7,095 nt of DNA from Selaginella moellendorffii (GCF_000143415.4 NW_003314672.1:1-7095), one strand, 5' to 3'; counted from the stretch's first letter, positions 1-7,095 are shown. Numbers and translations: made by a program. Notes: generated by a model from the sequence alone, not told the origin.

Positions 1-779
1 TTTCGGCTCCACTTTAGGGCCTGTCTCACATTAGCCTTTCCGGAAGCCTAATATTATTTAAACTCAAGGACATTTAACCCTAAATATTTTAATACTATTA
101 ACCAATTAAAAAAAAGGATGCACTTTTATTCATAGACCTTTTCTTTTTATATTTGAACCTGATCAATTATCTTTCAAGTTGTTCTTATTAATTGCTTACA
201 TACCTTTGTTATTAAGTGGAATGCAATCTCCAAGATTTAACATCTATACTACTATAGCCTTAAAAGAAAGCAATGGTGAAAGTGATAGTACTTGATAAAC
301 TAAAAGTGGAGTGACTCATAGTTATACTTTAACATTCCTTTATAGCTTAGCATGGTAAAGCACATGATTCTATTATCACTCTAAACCTTAAGAATTCTAC
401 TTTTATCCATGCCCAATATAGAAGCATTTGTCTGGCATTAGATGCAATCTAATGGTAGTGAAGCCCATCCATTACCTCCACGACTATCCTTTCAAGCTGG
501 GTGAACGTGTTATAGCCTCTTGGTCTTCTAACAAAATTGCAACCTCTCTATAGAACACCATAACAACCTCTCCATAGCATTATATTCTCACCTCTTGTTC
601 TTGTTGGGCATGGCAAAAGAACCAAATTGCACATTATCACTCTTGAATGGCTTGAAATTCTGCCCATGACATCGGCCATTGCTATGGGCATGAAGCCCCA
701 TCCCTGGCATACAGTTCGTGAAATATCCAATGCTTGTGTTTTTCTCATACTACTATTCTATATGTACCAATAAGACACC

Positions 780-980
780 GACACGTGTCCTCTAAATGTC
801 TTTTCTACCCTTTTTTTCTAGTGCACGCCATATTGTCTTGAAGTAACAAAAGTGACAAACCACCAGAGATCTGCAAAAGCCTATCGAACGCATCCGCCCA
901 CCAAACCTTTTGTTCTGTGAGTTGATGAAAAGAAGTTACGACCTTCTCCCTGCCATAGCATTAAAAGTTACACATGCATG
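780..980 (+). promoter_or_regulatory. Candidate cis-elements upstream of BAHD-A: palindromic G-box/ABRE GACACGTGTC (780-789), AC/MYB-like ACCAAAC (900-906) and RY motif CATGCATG (973-980)
   Basis: Motif matches only. The G-box and RY motif are also present at 6338-6347 and 6531-6538. Confidence 0.35.
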
Positions 981-1056
981 CGAACTTTTAGACCAGACAA
1001 GTCCTCTTGTGTGTTTCTAGGCTACTCTCTTCAAATCATGCGCTAGAAGAACAATC

Positions 1057-2469
1057 ATGTCCAATGTGGTTCATATAGCCTCCGTCTGCACGATCGTCCC
1101 AGCGATTCCAACGCGCCAGCCTTGTACTCTCTGGCTTTGCAACTCTCAGATCCAGCTCCTGTCCGAGAACTATCTCAAGCAAGTCTACTATTTCCCAGAA
1201 GCAGTGGATTCGTCACCAGGCTCCTTCGATCGATTGGTGACGAGCTTAAAAGTATCCTTGTCTCAGGTTCTCGTTCCATACTACCCAATAGCGGGGAGGC
1301 CCCGGATCGCCGGTCTCGACCGCCCGGTTCTCGAGTGCAACAACCAAGGCGTCGAATTTGTGGTGGCATTTGCCAATGCGAGCTTCCACGACTGGGGCGA
1401 TTCCATGAAGCACTGCTCAATCGAGCATGAGCTCAACCAGGCACAGACCGAGATCACGGATCACGAGAACTTCCCACAGCTCAAAGTCCAGGCAAGTCCG
1501 GAGACTTTACGTTGACCTGTTCTGACCGTGTTTGCAGGTCACCAAGTTCCGGTGTGGCGGGATCGCCCTCGGCCTCGTCACCACCCACATTGTCACCGAC
1601 GGCTCGTCCATCTTTGCGTTCTTCAAGGCCTGGTCGGATATCCATCAGGGATTGCCACCGCCGAATCCACCGCCATCATTCGACTCCAGCATCCTCAGGG
1701 CCCGAGATCCCCCCAGCATCAAGATGCCCATCCGGGACTACGTCGCGGTGGCACCGTCCCTGGCCCAGGATCACACTGGAAAGTCCGGGGAGGATATCTC
1801 TCCCAAATACCACGTCCGGGAATTCCACATGAGCGAGCTCCAGCTCTCGCATCTCAGGCACGAGATCGCATCCGGCCCGTTCTCCTACGGCAGCTTCCCG
1901 ACATCCTTCGAGGCCGCCGCGGCGCTCGTCTGGAAATCCATCACCGAGGCGCGGGATCTCGTCGACACCGCCATCGCCACATTCGTCTACTCGGGCTCCG
2001 CCAAGGCCGGCAAGAACCGGCGGCATCCCCCAATCCCGGACGAGTACTGCGGCACCTCCGCCATGACCCTCGTCCTCCCGTGTCCGGCGCGCGACCTCAA
2101 GAATAAGCACATCTCCTTGGCCGTTCGCCTCGTCCACGACGACATCCGGGCCATCACCCACGAGCGATTCCAATCCACCATTGACTGGATGGAGCTGGAA
2201 GGAATCGGCGGCCCCGGGCGCAAGGAGATCGCGGTCAACATGAGGGCCGAGATGGCGGTCTACTTCGTTGACCTGGTCACCTTCCCCGTCTACGGCGTTG
2301 ACTTTGGGACCCACTTCTCGCTGGTGCTAGAGCCGTGGTATGGCAACGGGGTGGTGGTGTTTCTTCCCACTGCCCAGGGAGGGACGCGAGAGTGGTCATG
2401 CTCCTCGAGGATGAAATGAAGAGGTTGCTGCAAAGCGAGCTCCTCGCCAAGTTCGCCACCTTGGAATGA
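1057..2469 (+). pseudogene. BAHD acyltransferase-family gene A, two exons (1057-1491, 1538-2419 as read; ancestral stop at 2467-2469); probably degenerating
   Basis: Exon 1 has BAHD N-terminal motifs (SLSQVLVPYYPIAGR, ECNNQGVEFVVA, PQLKVQ). Exon 2 begins VTKFRCGGIALG and has HIVTDG (HXXXD, 1586-1600). DFGWG is reduced to DFG-T (2300-2311), a 12-nt deletion relative to gene B. A frameshift near 2390 moves the homologous tail VVMLLEDEMKRLLQSELLAKFATLE* (cf. gene B AIRLPENQMKKLLEHQFFLKFATPV*) into another frame. Spliced product as read is 438 aa. Confidence 0.85.
1492..1537 (+). other. 46-nt GC-AG spliceosomal intron of BAHD-A
   Basis: CAG|GCAAGT donor, CTGAC branch-like motif at 1522-1526 and TTTGCAG| acceptor. 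Removal joins ...LKVQ to VTKF... in phase 0. Confidence 0.9.
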
Positions 2470-2508
2470 AAGGGATTTGAGGCACGAGAGACTAGAGCAA
2501 GTAAATTG

Positions 2509-2532
2509 GTTTCATCGATCGTTTCATCGATC
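2509..2532. repeat. Perfect 12-bp tandem duplication GTTTCATCGATC x2 in the A/X1 convergent gap
   Basis: Read directly from the sequence. Confidence 0.8.
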
Positions 2533-2609
2533 GGAAGAGAGCAAAACAAAACGCGATCCGAGAGGGAGAGAGAAACGAAGAACGAGGGTCGATCCGTCCG
2601 TGACCATCG

Positions 2610-3121
2610 TCAAGGAGAGTCGGAGGATTTGGTGGCACGAGCGGTGCACATCCTGGCACAAGACAACTTTATGGTGCCTCGGCTCGGCGGGGAAGGCACC
2701 TCCTTTCCCTTGCCGAGCCCTGGCAGCGAGAGCTTGGGCTTGGATCGATGAGCATCGATGCCGGTGGGCGCTCCAGATCTTGGCACCGGTCTCGAAGCCT
2801 GATCAAAGAATTGGATCAAAGAATTGGATGGATCGAAGGGAAAAGAATCTCATTTTCGTTTCATACCTCGGATATGCGAGGGAACCTCCGTGCGAACCAC
2901 GCCGCTGGAAACCACGCCCACGCGATCTGCGTCGCCGTCTCTCGGATCAGACCATAGACCAGCTCCGTGACCGGTCCCTCGATCGTCCCAGTGATCACCC
3001 TGCTGACCGGTCCCTCGATCATCCCCGTGAGCATCTTATCGAGCGGGCCCTCGATCAACCCCGTGAAGCTAAGTTTGATCACCAGCGGCGCTACCATCGA
3101 GATGAGCAGGGACTTGGCCAT
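2610..3121 (-). CDS. Unknown small repeat-containing protein X1, two exons (3121-2867 and 2798-2610), about 147 aa
   Basis: Exon 1 reads MAKSLLISMVAPLVIKLSFTGLIEGPLDKMLTGMIEGPVSRVITGTIEGPVTELVYGLIRETATQIAWAWFPAAWFARRFPRISE and ends at GAG|GTATGA. A 68-nt intron (2866-2799) ends TTTGATCAG|. Exon 2 reads ASRPVPRSGAPTGIDAHRSKPKLSLPGLGKGKEVPSP...DSP*. Peptide sequence, donor and intron phase are conserved in paralog X2. Confidence 0.65.
2957..3088. repeat. Degenerate 12-bp tandem array (11 units, GA-initial, mostly GATC/GACC) with 36-bp higher-order period, coding in X1
   Basis: gaccagctccgt gaccggtccctc gatcgtcccagt gatcaccctgct gaccggtccctc gatcatccccgt gagcatcttatc gagcgggccctc gatcaaccccgt gaagctaagttt gatcaccagcgg. 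Confidence 0.85.
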
Positions 3122-3326
3122 GAGCCCCAGCCCATCGCTCCGCCCGCAAGCTTCCTCCCCTCCAAGAAGAAAAACTAGGGCTGCGAAATGGCCAAGGGGG
3201 AGGGATTCATGATTGCGCTGGATGGTTCATGCTCCACGGTCCTTGTCAGAAGAAGAATTTCTTGCATAGCCAAATATCTTCTTTCTACGCGCTTGTAACG
3301 ATCTTTATCAGTTCATATTGTCAAGT

Positions 3327-3450
3327 TTGGTCAACATAGTCGATGGAAGTCCTAGGTCGTGAGCTCACTTCGAGTGCTTAGATTGACATGGTGGCCTCCA
3401 CAAGATTAGTGTCCATGTCGACTGTCGTGGCGATCTCCAACGGTAGCTAG
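3327..3450 (+). pseudogene. Remnant of a BAHD-B-like 5' end (B'): upstream region plus a 20-codon relic ORF at 3388-3450
   Basis: ttggtcaacata..aggtcgtgagctc..cgagt..gacATGgtggcctcca..agtgtccatgtcgactgtcgt..gcgatctccaac matches 4528-4705 (ttggtcaacata..aggtcgtgagctccgagt..gacATGgtagcgtcca..agtgtccgtgtcgactgtagt..gcgctctccaac). Translation MVASTRLVSMSTVVAISNGS* vs B MVASISSVRSVSVSTVV..ALSN. Confidence 0.75.
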
Positions 3451-3828
3451 GTAAAAGTCAAGTCATTCGTTTCTGTCGTTCGCAGCTATGGCATCTCAAC
3501 AGTGGAAGATATCTTCAAAATCGCGTACTACGGCAGAGGACATGTCTGTAAGAATCCATTCCATAGAAGAAGATGAGAAGAAGCTCAGCTAACAGGGCTG
3601 CAAACCTCGAGGTCAATGCACATTTGCAAGCCGATTTAATGACCAAGAAATTCCAGCTTTTGCCAAGTGTATCGGCGGCTTATAAGAGAATATATATAAA
3701 AATTACTATCATTGTTACTGCTTCCAATTGTTTCACACATAATAATGTTGCTTCATGCTTGATTGAGCGCATAGATCAATCCCAGGACTTTCAAGCAATT
3801 ACATGTTTATAGGCCTAGCTTCAAAGCT

Positions 3829-4271
3829 TTAAAACTTCGAGCTAGAATTCTTTCCCTTGCGGAGCTCCGGCAGCGGGATCTTGGGTTTGGATCGATGACC
3901 ATCGTTGCGGGTGGGAGCGGGCTCTCCAGATCTTGGCACCTAAAGAATTAGATGGTTCGAAGGAAAAGAATCACATTTCCGTTTCATACCTTTGTGATGC
4001 GAGGAAACATCTGTGCGAACCACGCCGCTGTCAGCCACGCCCACAGGATCTGGGCCGCCGTCTCTCGGATCGGGCCATAGACCAGCTCCGTGACCGGTCT
4101 TTGTGATCATCCTGTTGATCGGCCCCTCGATCATCCCTGTGATCGTCCTGTCGACCGGCCCCTCGATCATCCTGGTGATCGGTCCCTCGAACTAAATTTG
4201 ATCACCATCCCCGCCAGCATCGATACGAGCAGGGACTTCGCCAAGAACTTCGTCGCGTCCCCCCAGCCCAT
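3829..4271 (-). pseudogene. Paralog X2 of the unknown repeat protein, two exons (4271-3990 and 3939-3829), with two compensating 1-nt frameshifts and a premature stop
   Basis: ATG at 4271 gives MGWGDATKFLAKSLLVSMLAGMVIKFS. A 1-nt deletion near 4191 leads to TGA at 4169-4167. The shifted frame reads FEGPITRMIEGPVDRTITGMIEGPINRMIT, and an extra base near 4100 restores the frame to PVTELVYGPIRETAAQILWAWLTAAWFAQMFPRITK. Then AAG|GTATGA, a 50-nt intron (3989-3940) ending TTCTTTAG|, and exon 2 VPRSGEPAPTRNDGHRSKPKIPLPELRKGKNSSSKF*. Confidence 0.65.
4080..4211. repeat. Degenerate 12-bp tandem array (11 units, including one 13-mer and one 11-mer) in X2
   Basis: gaccagctccgt gaccggtctttgt gatcatcctgtt gatcggcccctc gatcatccctgt gatcgtcctgtc gaccggcccctc gatcatcctggt gatcggtccctc gaactaaattt gatcaccatccc. 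Confidence 0.85.
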
Positions 4272-4609: not shown

Positions 4610-6154
4610 ATGGTAGCGTCCATAAGCTCGGTAAGGTCAGTGTCCGTGTCGACTGTAGTTCCCCAGATCCCGACCCGGCAGCCCTGCGTTCTCGCGCTCT
4701 CCAACTTCCAGAGCTACTTTTCGTTTGAGCGCTACATCAAACAAGTGTTCTACTTCTCCGCCCCGGGATCTTCAGCTCTCAAGCAGCACGATGACCAGGA
4801 AGAAGAAGAAGAAGATCAAGAACAGAAGAGCCCTCGGATCGATAACCACGACGAAGAGGAGTTCCAGCGCCTGGTTTGCAGCATGAGAGAGTCTCTGTCG
4901 CGGTTGCTCGTTCCATACTACCCTCTGGCGGGGAGAATGCGGCGGCGAGAGCGGCTAACAACGATCCAGGAGCTCCACTGCAACGACGCGGGCGTCATGG
5001 TGGTGGCCGCGATGGCTAACACAGCCTTGGGCGACGCCCGGCAGTGCCCCATCGAGCACGAGCTCTACCCGGAACCCAGGGTCAGGGATCCCGCCAACGC
5101 GCCGCTGCTAAAAATCCAGGCAAGTAGCTCCGTTGACTCTGTTGACTAAAAGAGTGTTGACTGGCTGTAAGCGTTGACTGGCATTGTGTGTTCACAGGTG
5201 ACAAAGTTCCAGTGTGCCGGGATTGCTGTGGGAGTGCTCACCTGCGAGAACATCCTCGACGCCTCCTCCTCCTTCCCGTTCCTCCGGGCGTGGGGGGAGA
5301 TCCACCGGGGCCTCGCACTGGCGGTGGCTCCATCGTTTGATTCCAGCGTGCTCAAGCCCCGCGATCCTCCGCAGGTCAATCTCCCCGTCCGCGACTACGT
5401 CGTCGCCCCACCGCCAGCAAGCACGGTGGAAGCCATGGCCAAATCCTCCCACGACGCCATCCCCGACCGCCAGAGGCTCTTCCACATCGCCCCCGATCGA
5501 GTCCGCGAGCTCGTTGCCGAGGTCCAGCGCGGGAGATTCTTCTCCTCTCGTGACGAGCCGCCGCCGAGCTCGTTCGAGGCCATCTCCGCCATGATCTGGA
5601 AGTGCGTCGCGGACGTCAAAGACCTGGACGATTCGGAGAGCATGACTTACATCTACGCGCTCTCCACCAAAGGACCCAAGCGCTGGAGCCCCGAGATCCC
5701 GAGCCACTACTGCGGCAGCTCCGCTCACATCCCCTGCCTGGCTGCTCCCGTGGGCGAGATACGCAAGAACCACATCTCCCACGCCGCCAAGCTCCTCCGC
5801 GACGATATCCATTCCGCCACCCAGGAGCGCATCCAGTCCGCCATCGACTGGATGGAGCTCCACCTCCGGGCCGGGATCTTCGTGGACGACAACTTCCCGC
5901 TGCCAAGGTGGTCGGGGAGAGCGATCAACAGCAACAGCCTCACGGCATTCCCGATCTACGAGCTCGACTTTGGATGGGGGAGGCCGCGACACTTCTCCTT
6001 CGTCTTGGATGCCGAGCCGGGCAGTGGAGCCGCCATTCTTCTTCCCACTCGAGATGGCGGACGAGACCGGCATCTGGCGATTCGGCTGCCCGAGAACCAG
6101 ATGAAGAAGTTACTCGAGCACCAGTTCTTCCTCAAGTTCGCCACCCCGGTGTAG
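4610..6154 (+). CDS. BAHD acyltransferase-family protein B, two exons (4610-5119, 5198-6154), 488 aa; catalytic His replaced (ENILD), DFGWG intact
   Basis: SLSRLLVPYYPLAGR, CNDAGV, PLLKIQ|VTKFQCAGIAVG, PSFDSSVL and FPIYELDFGWGRP (DFGWG at 5966-5980). Both exons are uninterrupted and the stop TAG is at 6152-6154. Confidence 0.9.
4799..4813 (+). repeat. (GAA)5 coding microsatellite in an acidic loop of BAHD-B
   Basis: Encodes EEEEE within QHDDQEEEEEDQEQ. Confidence 0.8.
5120..5197 (+). other. 78-nt GC-AG intron of BAHD-B
   Basis: CAG|GCAAGT donor and TTCACAG| acceptor. Same position and phase as in gene A. Confidence 0.9.
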
Positions 6155-6168
6155 CAAACAAGTTGTAG

Positions 6169-7095
6169 ACAAAATTGCTCTCCATAGCACTATGTTCTCA
6201 CCCCTTGTTCTTGTTGGGCATGGCAAAAGAACCAAATTGCACATTATCACCATTCTGCCCATGACATCGGCCATTGCTATGGGCATGAAGCCCGATCCCT
6301 TCTCATACTGTTATCCTATATGTACCAATAAGACACTGACACGTGTCCTCTTTTTCTACTACTACCCTTTTTCTTCTAGTGCACGCCATATTGTCTTGAA
6401 GTAACAAAAGTGACAAACCACCAGAGATCTGCAAAAGCCTATCGAACGCATCCGCCCACCAAATCTTTTGTTCTGTGAGTTGATGAAAAGAAGTTACGAC
6501 CTTCTCCCTGCCATAGCATTAAAAGTTACACATGCATGCGAACTTTTAGACCAGACAAGTCCTCTTGTGTGTTTCTAGGCTACTCTCTTCAAATCATGCG
6601 CTAGAAGAACAATCATGTCCAATGTGGTTCATATAGCCTCCGTCTGCACGATCGTCCCAGCGATTCCAACGCGCCAGCCTTGTACTCTCTGGCTTTGCAA
6701 CTTTCAGATCCAGCTCCTGTCCGAGAACTATCTCAAGCAAGTCTACTATTTCCCAGAAGCAGTGGATTCGTCACCAGGCTCCTTCGATCGATTGGTGACG
6801 AGCTTAAAAGTATCCTTGTCTCAGGTTCTCGTTCCATACTACCCAATAGCGGGGAGGCCCCGGATCGCCGGTCTCGACCGCCCGGTTCTCGAGTGCAACG
6901 ACCAAGGCGTCGAATTTGTGGTGGCATTTGCCAATGCGAGCTTCCACGACTGGGGCGATTCCATGAAGCACTGCTCAATCGAGCATGAGCTCAACCCGGC
7001 ACAGACCGAGATCACGGATCACGAGAACTTCCCACAGCTCAAAGTCCAGGCAAGTCCGGAGACTTTACGTTGACCTGTTCTGACCGTGTTGCAGT
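6169..7095 (+). repeat. Copy 2 of the direct duplication, beginning 14 nt after the BAHD-B stop codon and running off the window
   Basis: acaaaattgc...tccatagca...gggcatggcaaaagaaccaaattgcacattatcac etc., shared with 531 onward. Confidence 0.95.
6615..7095 (+). CDS. BAHD gene C (recent duplicate of A): exon 1 at 6615-7049, GC-AG intron from 7050 to about 7094, truncated by window end
   Basis: 432 of 435 nt identical to exon 1 of A by eye comparison, with the same CAG|GCAAGT donor. Confidence 0.85.

What the first reader, a model, noticed from the sequence alone, without database searches (positions are those of the whole stretch)
2610..4271. Hidden two-exon gene family (X1/X2) encoding an unrecognised small protein with 4-aa modular EGP repeats, embedded in a BAHD cluster
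Seen: two minus-strand paralogs conserve the N-terminal AKSLL(I/V)SM..(L/M)VIK, the repeat core and the Trp-rich PVTELVYG(L/P)IRETA(T/A)QI.WAW..AAWFA..FPRI. They also share a phase-0 GTATGA donor, a short intron, and a basic Pro-rich exon 2 (VPRSG..AP....HRSKPK..LP.L.KGK). In the core, every fourth residue is I/L/V: TGLI EGPL DKML TGMI EGPV SRVI TGTI EGPV TELV YGLI. I do not recognise a family. Inference: this could be (a) an amphipathic lipid- or membrane-binding partner or scaffold for BAHD-dependent polyester, wax or spore-wall chemistry, or (b) a repeated-core peptide precursor that the neighbouring acyltransferases modify. Both options are speculative.
Basis: partly seen in the sequence, partly recalled or inferred. 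Interest (0 to 1): 0.8.

Follow-up and report, generated by a model that had tools for sequence, protein, structure and literature searches.

The report
Spikemoss orphan small gene, decaying copies
The two stretches are damaged duplicates of a small, spikemoss-only gene of unknown function that public annotation already lists as an uncharacterised protein; they were copied along with neighbouring acyltransferase genes, and nothing links them to those enzymes.

Summary
The window is a copy-number-variable BAHD acyltransferase array of Selaginella moellendorffii. X1 and X2 are real minus-strand, transcribed, GT-AG-spliced paralogues. The family is not hidden. One locus in the same array is already annotated with exactly this two-exon structure: SELMODRAFT_431284 (179 aa) and LOC112344375 (149 aa), probably two alleles. 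These are the only true relatives found among billions of proteins.

Both window copies are damaged.
- **X2** has a 1-nt and an 11-nt deletion and a stop after 34 codons. The other haplotype shares the 1-nt deletion and the stop.
- **X1** keeps an 85-codon exon 1. A 16-nt deletion put the ancestral ATG out of frame, and the ancestral splice acceptor is lost. The only junction seen (2867/2778, not the predicted 2798) shifts exon 2 out of the conserved frame.
- X1 is also missing from the reference haplotype.

Exon 1 looks coding: its GC3 is 0.80-0.84, like the BAHD genes, and it has a modest excess of synonymous changes (dN/dS 0.35-0.5). Exon 2 shows no constraint.

The every-fourth-residue pattern comes from a 36-nt minisatellite built of three 12-nt units. 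No fold could be predicted (pLDDT 46), and nothing supports a BAHD partner or a peptide precursor.

My best reading is a young, species-restricted, probably membrane-associated repeat microprotein gene that was duplicated with the BAHD array and is decaying here.

The parts
2867..3121 (-). X1 exon 1: an intact 85-codon ORF starting from a derived ATG at 3121. It has an N-terminal hydrophobic segment, three IEGP-type 12-residue units and a Trp-rich segment.
   Evidence: ORF list and sequence. It is 72% identical to the exon 1 of each of the two annotated proteins. GC1/2/3 is 0.54/0.48/0.82, like the BAHD coding sequence.
3091..3135 (-). Ancestral start codon of X1 (3135-3133). A 16-nt deletion has put it out of frame, so it now opens a 14-codon upstream ORF that overlaps the new ATG.
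   Evidence: Alignment A2 columns 70-85, frame f1, and sequence. Transcript contig 2864-3202 includes it.
2779..2866 (-). X1 intron as observed: 88 nt, GT..AG on the minus strand. The acceptor lies 20 nt downstream of the predicted one.
   Evidence: Joint 2778/2867 with CT..AC ends on the + strand, run X3. The exon-2 contig 2578-2780 ends at the same branch point.
2610..2798 (-). X1 exon 2 region. The ancestral acceptor AG is now CG (2788-2787). The observed splice enters at 2778, in a different frame.
   Evidence: There is no detectable constraint: position differences are 9/8/9 and dN/dS is about 0.8.
2969..3066 (-). 36-nt minisatellite (2.7 copies) that encodes the 12-residue repeat core of X1.
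   Evidence: TRF and repeat family D3.
3990..4271 (-). X2 exon 1 remnant, a pseudogene. It has a 1-nt deletion near 4190 and an 11-nt deletion near 4098-4101. The frame from ATG 4271 stops at TGA 4169-4167.
   Evidence: The allele in L001 3655-4150 shares the 1-nt deletion and the stop, and no gene is called there.
3940..3989 (-).
   Evidence: Joint 3937/3988, cut +2, CT..AC ends, run X1, depth 9.
3829..3939 (-). X2 exon 2: a 36-codon basic, Pro-rich tail plus stop. Homology to the other copies ends after the KGK motif.
   Evidence: Translation and alignment A2.
4102..4181 (-). 36-nt / 12-nt minisatellite of X2.
   Evidence: TRF.
1057..2419 (+). BAHD-A (exons 1057-1488 and 1535-2419), convergent with X1. 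This is context, not part of the X gene.
   Evidence: Pfam PF02458. The spliced contigs skip 1489-1534.
4610..6154 (+). BAHD-B (exons 4610-5116 and 5195-6154), head-to-head with X2. The two ATGs are 339 nt apart. This is context, not part of the X gene.
   Evidence: Pfam PF02458. It is 99% identical to P0001 of S. moellendorffii. The spliced contigs skip 5117-5194.

Best explanation
X1 and X2 are duplicates of a young gene restricted to Selaginella moellendorffii. Its intact locus in the same BAHD array is already annotated as an uncharacterised protein of 149 or 179 aa.

The gene has two exons. Exon 1 encodes a hydrophobic N-terminal segment, a variable number of 8- and 12-residue IEGP-type units, and a Trp-rich segment. 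The units are written by a 36-nt minisatellite made of three 12-nt sub-units, each ending in GATC. Exon 2 encodes a basic, Pro-rich and probably disordered tail.

The gene was carried along when the BAHD-A/BAHD-B unit duplicated in tandem, and most of its copies are decaying. X2 is a transcribed, spliced pseudogene driven from the promoter region it shares with BAHD-B. X1 keeps an open exon 1 but has lost its ancestral start frame and splice acceptor, and it is absent from one haplotype.

Inferred, not shown: the intact protein is a small membrane-associated repeat microprotein. It would have an N-terminal signal-anchor or signal peptide, an extended repeat region with an aliphatic residue at every fourth position, and an interfacial Trp-rich helix. 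I see no demonstrated functional tie to the BAHD enzymes.
For: **Organism and public annotation**
- BAHD-B exon 2 is 99% identical to an S. moellendorffii protein.
- Public gene calls of 149 aa (L001 8049-8533, minus strand) and 179 aa (L002 7358-7942, minus strand) have no Pfam family. Read by hand, they match the two-exon frame exactly.

**Relatives**
- The word search returns only these two proteins.
- The exhaustive HMMER search finds only P0006 as a true relative.

**Transcription and splicing**
- Both X1 and X2 show minus-strand GT-AG joints.

**Coding signal in exon 1**
- GC3 is 0.80-0.84 in the proposed frame, against 0.79 in the BAHD genes.
- Substitutions by codon position are 19/7/19, and dN/dS is 0.35-0.49.
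- Synonymous changes number 19 against 11.5 expected, the best of six frames (p 0.007 in one direction, 0.056 in the other).

**Decay of copies**
- X2 frameshifts and stop.
- X1's 16-nt deletion and lost acceptor.
- Further fragments at L001 9130-9330 and 9805-9826, and at L002 8762-9165 and 9664-9850.
- X1 is absent from L001. The deletion junction 1930/3344 also appears in an independent run.

**Repeat origin and membrane hint**
- TRF periods of 36 and 12 nt.
- Kyte-Doolittle 19-residue maximum of 1.69 at residues 7-25.
Against: - The selection signal is weak. One neighbouring frame scores nearly as well (dN/dS 0.47-0.62, p 0.04-0.09), and it rests essentially on one long branch.
- Exon 2 shows no constraint and no coding-like composition.
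- Only one intact locus is known, apparently as two alleles. One allele lacks 10 residues of the Trp-rich segment.
- Decayed fragments are also transcribed, so transcription is not evidence of function.
- There is no peptide evidence and no orthologue in another species.
- The AlphaFold2 model is unusable (pLDDT 46, pTM 0.18), so the membrane-protein reading rests on hydropathy alone.
- The X1 junction rests on one low-depth contig.
Confidence: 0.6

Rival explanations
1. The locus makes no functional protein. X transcripts are spliced non-coding by-products of the BAHD-B bidirectional promoter and of convergent transcription at the BAHD-A 3' end. The ORFs stay open only because a GC-rich 36-nt minisatellite has few stops in several frames, and the public gene models are over-predictions.
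For: - The + strand carries a 233-aa ORF across the same region, which shows that long chance ORFs occur here.
- Decayed fragments and the X2 pseudogene are transcribed and spliced just like X1.
- Exon 2 evolves neutrally.
- There are no relatives outside the species.
- The fold prediction has low confidence.
- X1 is dispensable on one haplotype.
Against: - Exon 1 has the gene-like GC3 of 0.80-0.84 in exactly the open frame, and I counted this by hand in its non-repeat parts as well (plus the sequence).
- Second codon positions are spared (7 changes against 19 and 19), and synonymous changes are in excess in that frame.
- The exon 2 stop codon is at the same position in X1 and in both annotated alleles.
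Confidence: 0.3
2. One reading: X is an amphipathic membrane- or lipid-binding partner or scaffold of the neighbouring BAHD acyltransferases, kept next to them for co-function.
For: - X sits next to BAHD genes and is head-to-head with BAHD-B.
- It has a hydrophobic N-terminus and a Trp-rich segment.
- X and BAHD transcripts occur in the same runs.
Against: - Adjacency is explained by co-duplication within one tandem array.
- Every X copy beside a BAHD-B is dead (X2 and the fragments) while the BAHD-B genes stay intact.
- There is no X-like sequence near a more distant BAHD gene.
- No complex prediction was run, because neighbourhood alone does not justify one.
Confidence: 0.05
3. One reading: X is a repeated-core peptide precursor, and its IEGP units are released and acylated by the BAHD enzymes.
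For: - The number of core-like units varies between copies and alleles.
- The N-terminal segment could be a signal peptide.
Against: - The units have no flanking processing sites and are contiguous parts of one 12-nt/36-nt DNA repeat.
- From general knowledge, BAHD enzymes act on small-molecule alcohols and amines in the cytosol, and none is known to modify ribosomal peptides.
- No known precursor family matches.
Confidence: 0.03

Closest known systems
SELMODRAFT_431284 (179 aa) and LOC112344375 (149 aa), uncharacterised proteins of Selaginella moellendorffii
   Same: They share the two-exon minus-strand structure, the donor and the reading frames. X1 exon 1 is 72% identical to each. The tail and its stop position are homologous. 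They lie in the same BAHD array.
   Different: X1 has a derived start codon, a lost ancestral acceptor and fewer repeat units. X2 is frameshifted and its tail is truncated. Neither annotated protein has any described function, and no paper mentions SELMODRAFT_431284.
Alveolin / articulin-type 12-residue repeats (Pfam IMCp, PF12314), and bacterial N-terminally anchored proteins with EKIV-DRPV-DRIV repeats
   Same: The periodicity is 12 residues made of three 4-residue sub-units, each ending in Val or Ile, with a Pro in the middle sub-unit. Several of the bacterial-type hits also begin with a hydrophobic N-terminal segment. The 12-residue periodicity of alveolins is documented in PMC4303705.
   Different: The X proteins do not match PF12314 even at E up to 10. 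The X units are Gly- and Thr/Met-rich and nearly uncharged, not the charged Glu/Lys/Val type. The HMMER hits come from repeated low-complexity matches, so this is a resemblance in pattern, not homology.
Phage T4 gp5 C-terminal triple-stranded beta-helix (8-residue repeats)
   Same: The X repeat core (residues 29-83) aligns weakly with the gp5 beta-helix repeats.
   Different: At E 0.4 the match is not significant. No reliable fold model exists to test it.

Membership tests
S. moellendorffii uncharacterised protein family (SELMODRAFT_431284 / LOC112344375) | Significant sequence similarity over exon 1 | tested here: met
   X1 exon 1 against P0006 gives E 6e-20 at 72% identity. Alignment A3 shows 72% identity to both proteins.
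S. moellendorffii uncharacterised protein family (SELMODRAFT_431284 / LOC112344375) | Same two-exon structure, with a phase-0 donor and exon 2 read in the conserved VPRSG... frame | tested here: not met
   The donor is conserved in X1 and X2. X2's junction is the homologous one, but its exon 1 is frameshifted. X1's ancestral acceptor is lost, and the only observed junction (2867/2778) shifts the exon 2 frame.
S. moellendorffii uncharacterised protein family (SELMODRAFT_431284 / LOC112344375) | Uninterrupted ORF from the ancestral ATG | tested here: not met
   In X1 the ancestral ATG 3135 is out of frame after a 16-nt deletion. In X2 there is a stop at 4169-4167.
Alveolin / IMCp repeat proteins (PF12314) | Match to the Pfam IMCp profile | tested here: not met
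   hmmscan of P0005, P0006 and the X1 and X2 pieces found no family, even at E 1-10.
Alveolin / IMCp repeat proteins (PF12314) | Tandem repeats with a 12-residue period rich in Val/Ile and Pro | tested here: met
   36-nt TRF period. The 4+4+4 register was printed. The literature definition is in PMC4303705.
Plant repeated-core peptide precursors (RiPP-like) | A recognised precursor or processing domain, or flanking cleavage motifs around each core | tested here: not met
   No Pfam domain was found. The units are contiguous, with no spacers.
Plant repeated-core peptide precursors (RiPP-like) | Detected mature peptides | not testable with these tools
   This needs peptidomics.

The most novel reading that the evidence does not exclude
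The intact locus is a recently born protein-coding gene that grew out of a 12-nt/36-nt minisatellite inside a BAHD array. It has been caught with alleles that differ in repeat number and with a trail of dead duplicates. It encodes a new kind of membrane-associated repeat microprotein, with an aliphatic residue at every fourth position that resembles alveolin or beta-solenoid repeats by convergence.
Probability: 0.2. Interest if true: 0.5.

Novelty: new member of a known kind. Interest (0 to 1): 0.25.

Why it matters
This finding corrects a tempting story of a hidden gene family tied to BAHD chemistry. What is actually here is one species-restricted, already annotated but unstudied small gene and its decaying duplicates. 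They hitch-hiked in a tandem array whose copy number varies between haplotypes.

Its modest value is as a worked example of the birth and death of an orphan, minisatellite-encoded ORF in a lycophyte. It also warns that transcription and splicing alone, which the dead copies show too, do not demonstrate function. If the intact locus proves to be translated, it would be a tractable case for studying how repeat expansion builds a new protein.

Tried and rejected
**Searches that found no known family**
- Pfam on all X pieces and on both annotated proteins: nothing.
- ESM Atlas by features: no usable hit.
- PDB by sequence: only E 0.4 to the T4 gp5 beta-helix.
- Rfam on the whole window: nothing.
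- First word search with the 86-aa X1 ORF: no candidates. A later search with the longer paralogue exon found the two annotated proteins.
- The 13 remote HMMER hits were inspected and rejected as homologues. They are long, unrelated repeat proteins matched through period-4/12 low complexity.

**Structure**
- AlphaFold2 on a 9-row family alignment gave pLDDT 46 and pTM 0.18. I therefore ran no fold search.

**Origin and linkage tests**
- X derived from BAHD sequence: blastn and tblastx gave only noise.
- X-like sequence near another Selaginella BAHD gene (L003): none.
- The antisense 233-aa + strand ORF was rejected as the product, because the introns are GT-AG on the minus strand only and that frame has GC3 of about 0.5.

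**Steps not run**
- Complex prediction of X with BAHD-B, because I do not claim binding and adjacency alone is not a reason.
- Exons were handled separately by reference, and the public full-length proteins P0005 and P0006 were used instead.

**Earlier notes of this scan**
- Look-ups by sequence and by relatives returned nothing.

Full report
**Setting**

The window holds two BAHD acyltransferase genes on the + strand. BAHD-A has exons 1057-1488 and 1535-2419. BAHD-B has exons 4610-5116 and 5195-6154. Both match Pfam PF02458. A second copy of BAHD-A starts at 6615, which gives a 5558-nt tandem unit.

BAHD-B exon 2 is 99% identical to a Selaginella moellendorffii protein. The public assembly GCA_000143415.2 holds two related versions of the locus: L001 on scaffold GL377569.1 and L002 on GL377714.1. 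The window is identical to neither.
- L002 has a single BAHD-A/BAHD-B unit.
- L001 has two units, and one of them lacks window 1940-3343, that is, the 3' half of BAHD-A plus X1.
- That deletion junction (1930/3344) also appears in a contig of an independent run.

So the array varies in copy number between haplotypes.

**The observation**

X1 is as described. It has a minus-strand ORF from 3121 to 2867 that ends at a GAG|GTATGA donor. X2 is a DNA paralogue at about 80-87% identity.

- Against the intact copies it has a 1-nt deletion right after the VIKFS codons.
- It has an 11-nt deletion just before PVTELV.
- The frame from its ATG (4271) ends at TGA 4169-4167, after 34 codons.
- The L001 allele of X2 shares the 1-nt deletion and the stop, and has an 8-nt deletion at the second site. 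No gene is called there.

The aliphatic residue at every fourth position is real. It is a direct consequence of the DNA: a 36-nt tandem repeat (2969-3066 and 4102-4181) with a 12-nt sub-period. Each 12-nt sub-unit ends in GATC, so each group of four codons ends in an ATC, GTC or CTC codon.

**Transcripts**

The four runs laid on the window are spliced transcriptome assemblies, because the BAHD introns are skipped.

Both X copies show joints with CT..AC ends on the + strand, which is GT..AG on the minus strand.
- For X2 the joint is 3990/3939, exactly as predicted (run X1, depth 9).
- For X1 the donor is as predicted, but the acceptor is at 2779/2778, not 2799/2798 (run X3, depth 3, 28 nt on the shorter side). 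An exon-2 contig ending at 2780 marks the same branch point.
- Entering exon 2 at 2778 reads a different frame, which gives an unrelated 84-residue tail.
- Unspliced contigs also cover 2441-2877, 2864-3202 and 2649-2838.

A loose end at 3123 in two runs matches the decayed X fragment of L001 near 9805-9826. Dead copies are therefore transcribed as well.

**The family is already annotated**

The public annotation calls a 149-aa gene at L001 8049-8533 (minus strand) and a 179-aa gene at L002 7358-7942 (minus strand). Neither has a Pfam family.

They are P0006 (LOC112344375) and P0005 (SELMODRAFT_431284). They occupy the same position in the two haplotypes and differ by only 2 substitutions across the 60 codons of exon 2, so they are probably alleles of one locus. 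They differ in repeat number and by a 10-residue deletion in the Trp-rich segment.

More fragments lie at L001 9130-9330 and 9805-9826, and at L002 8762-9165 and 9664-9850. Every copy that sits head-to-head with a BAHD-B gene is dead.

**X1 is also damaged**

Relative to all the other copies, X1 has three marks of decay.
- A 16-nt deletion puts the ancestral ATG (3135) out of frame. That ATG now opens a 14-codon upstream ORF overlapping a new ATG at 3121.
- An insertion with a 13-nt tandem duplication destroyed the ancestral acceptor, which is now CG at 2788-2787.
- X1 is absent from the L001 haplotype.

**Is it coding?**

For exon 1 the evidence is moderately positive.
- GC1/2/3 in the proposed frame is 0.50-0.54 / 0.48 / 0.80-0.84, against 0.60 / 0.44 / 0.79 for the BAHD coding sequence. 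By hand count on the sequence, the non-repeat N- and C-terminal parts of exon 1 also have GC3 of about 0.8.
- Between X1 and the annotated copies, substitutions by codon position are 19/7/19, and Nei-Gojobori dN/dS is 0.35-0.42. One other frame gives 0.49-0.62.
- A shuffle test that keeps the number of changes and the transition/transversion mix gives 19 synonymous changes against 11.5 expected. This is the best of the six frames, with p 0.007 in one direction and 0.056 in the other.

For exon 2 there is no signal. Position differences are 9/8/9, dN/dS is about 0.8, p is 0.3-0.7 and the GC profile is flat. The stop codon is nevertheless at the same place in X1 and in both annotated alleles.

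The in-frame repeat-number differences say little, because a 12-nt or 36-nt unit is always a multiple of three.

**Relatives and fold**
- The word search finds only the two Selaginella proteins.
- The exhaustive HMMER search of 1.84 billion representatives finds only P0006 as a true relative.
- The other 13 hits are long repeat proteins matched through several period-4/12 stretches. They include EKIV-DRPV-DRIV repeats, some of which hit Pfam IMCp, as well as TGVIEDSGNQTL and VTGNVSGN repeats. I read these as convergent low-complexity matches.
- Alveolins are known for a 12-residue periodicity (PMC4303705), but the X proteins do not match the IMCp profile.
- The ESM Atlas gave no usable hit, Rfam gave nothing, and PDB gave only E 0.4.
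- AlphaFold2 gives pLDDT 46, so nothing can be said about the fold.
- Hydropathy peaks at 1.69 over residues 7-25, which fits a signal-anchor or a signal peptide. The tail of the 179-aa protein carries a net charge of +6.

**Link to the BAHD genes**

X shows no sequence relation to the BAHD genes. No X-like sequence lies within 10 kb of a more distant Selaginella BAHD gene. Co-duplication within one array explains the adjacency. I did not run a complex prediction, because I make no claim that the proteins bind.

**Verdict**

The family is real but already annotated. It is restricted to this species and is probably protein-coding at its one intact locus. In this window it is represented by one pseudogene (X2) and one damaged copy (X1).

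The most likely product of the intact locus is a small membrane-associated repeat protein. That step is inferred from hydropathy and repeat pattern only. The main rival, at about 0.3, is that none of these transcripts is translated to any purpose.

The joined X1 model was not built or searched.

Noticed in passing
window 5174-5260 (BAHD-B exon 2 start) and 1532-1620 (BAHD-A exon 2 start): BAHD-B reads C-E-N-I-L-D-A where BAHD enzymes carry the catalytic HXXXDG, so it has Glu in place of His. It keeps DFGWG. BAHD-A keeps H-I-V-T-D-G, but its DFGWG region reads DFGTHF. Earlier notes of this scan describe a Glu-for-His BAHD family in this genome.
   Followed up: partly
window 1940-3343; L001 about 3176-3184: Presence/absence polymorphism. 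The reference scaffold GL377569.1 lacks the 3' half of BAHD-A plus X1. The same junction (1930/3344) is found in a transcript contig of run X2, so the truncated BAHD-A is transcribed into the spacer.
   Followed up: partly
window 5596-5650: Run X3 shows a 55-nt skip inside BAHD-B exon 2 with CT..AC ends, which is GT..AG on the minus strand. It could be an antisense spliced transcript or a 55-nt deletion allele. Either would break the BAHD-B frame.
   Followed up: no
window 2427 / 2914: One run X3 contig (depth 6.7) joins 2427, just past the BAHD-A stop, to 2914 on the opposite strand. It may be an assembly chimera of convergent overlapping transcripts or an inversion allele. It remains unexplained.
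   Followed up: no
window 2477-3178 (+): A 233-aa ORF runs antisense to X1. It is open because it sits in the mirror frame of a GC3-rich ORF. It has no Pfam match and the wrong GC3, so I take it to be a chance ORF.
   Followed up: yes
window 568-793 and 6178-6351: The spacer upstream of each BAHD-A copy is duplicated at 92-98% identity as part of the 5558-nt tandem unit. BAHD-A and BAHD-A' are 99-100% identical over 808-1298 and 6366-6856, which points to a very recent duplication or gene conversion.
   Followed up: no
window 1-2535 vs L002 4548-7102; window 2604-3181 vs L002 7352-7785: Identity to the other haplotype drops sharply from 98.3% across BAHD-A to about 84% in the X copy just downstream. 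That suggests a recombination or conversion breakpoint near 2535-2600.
   Followed up: no
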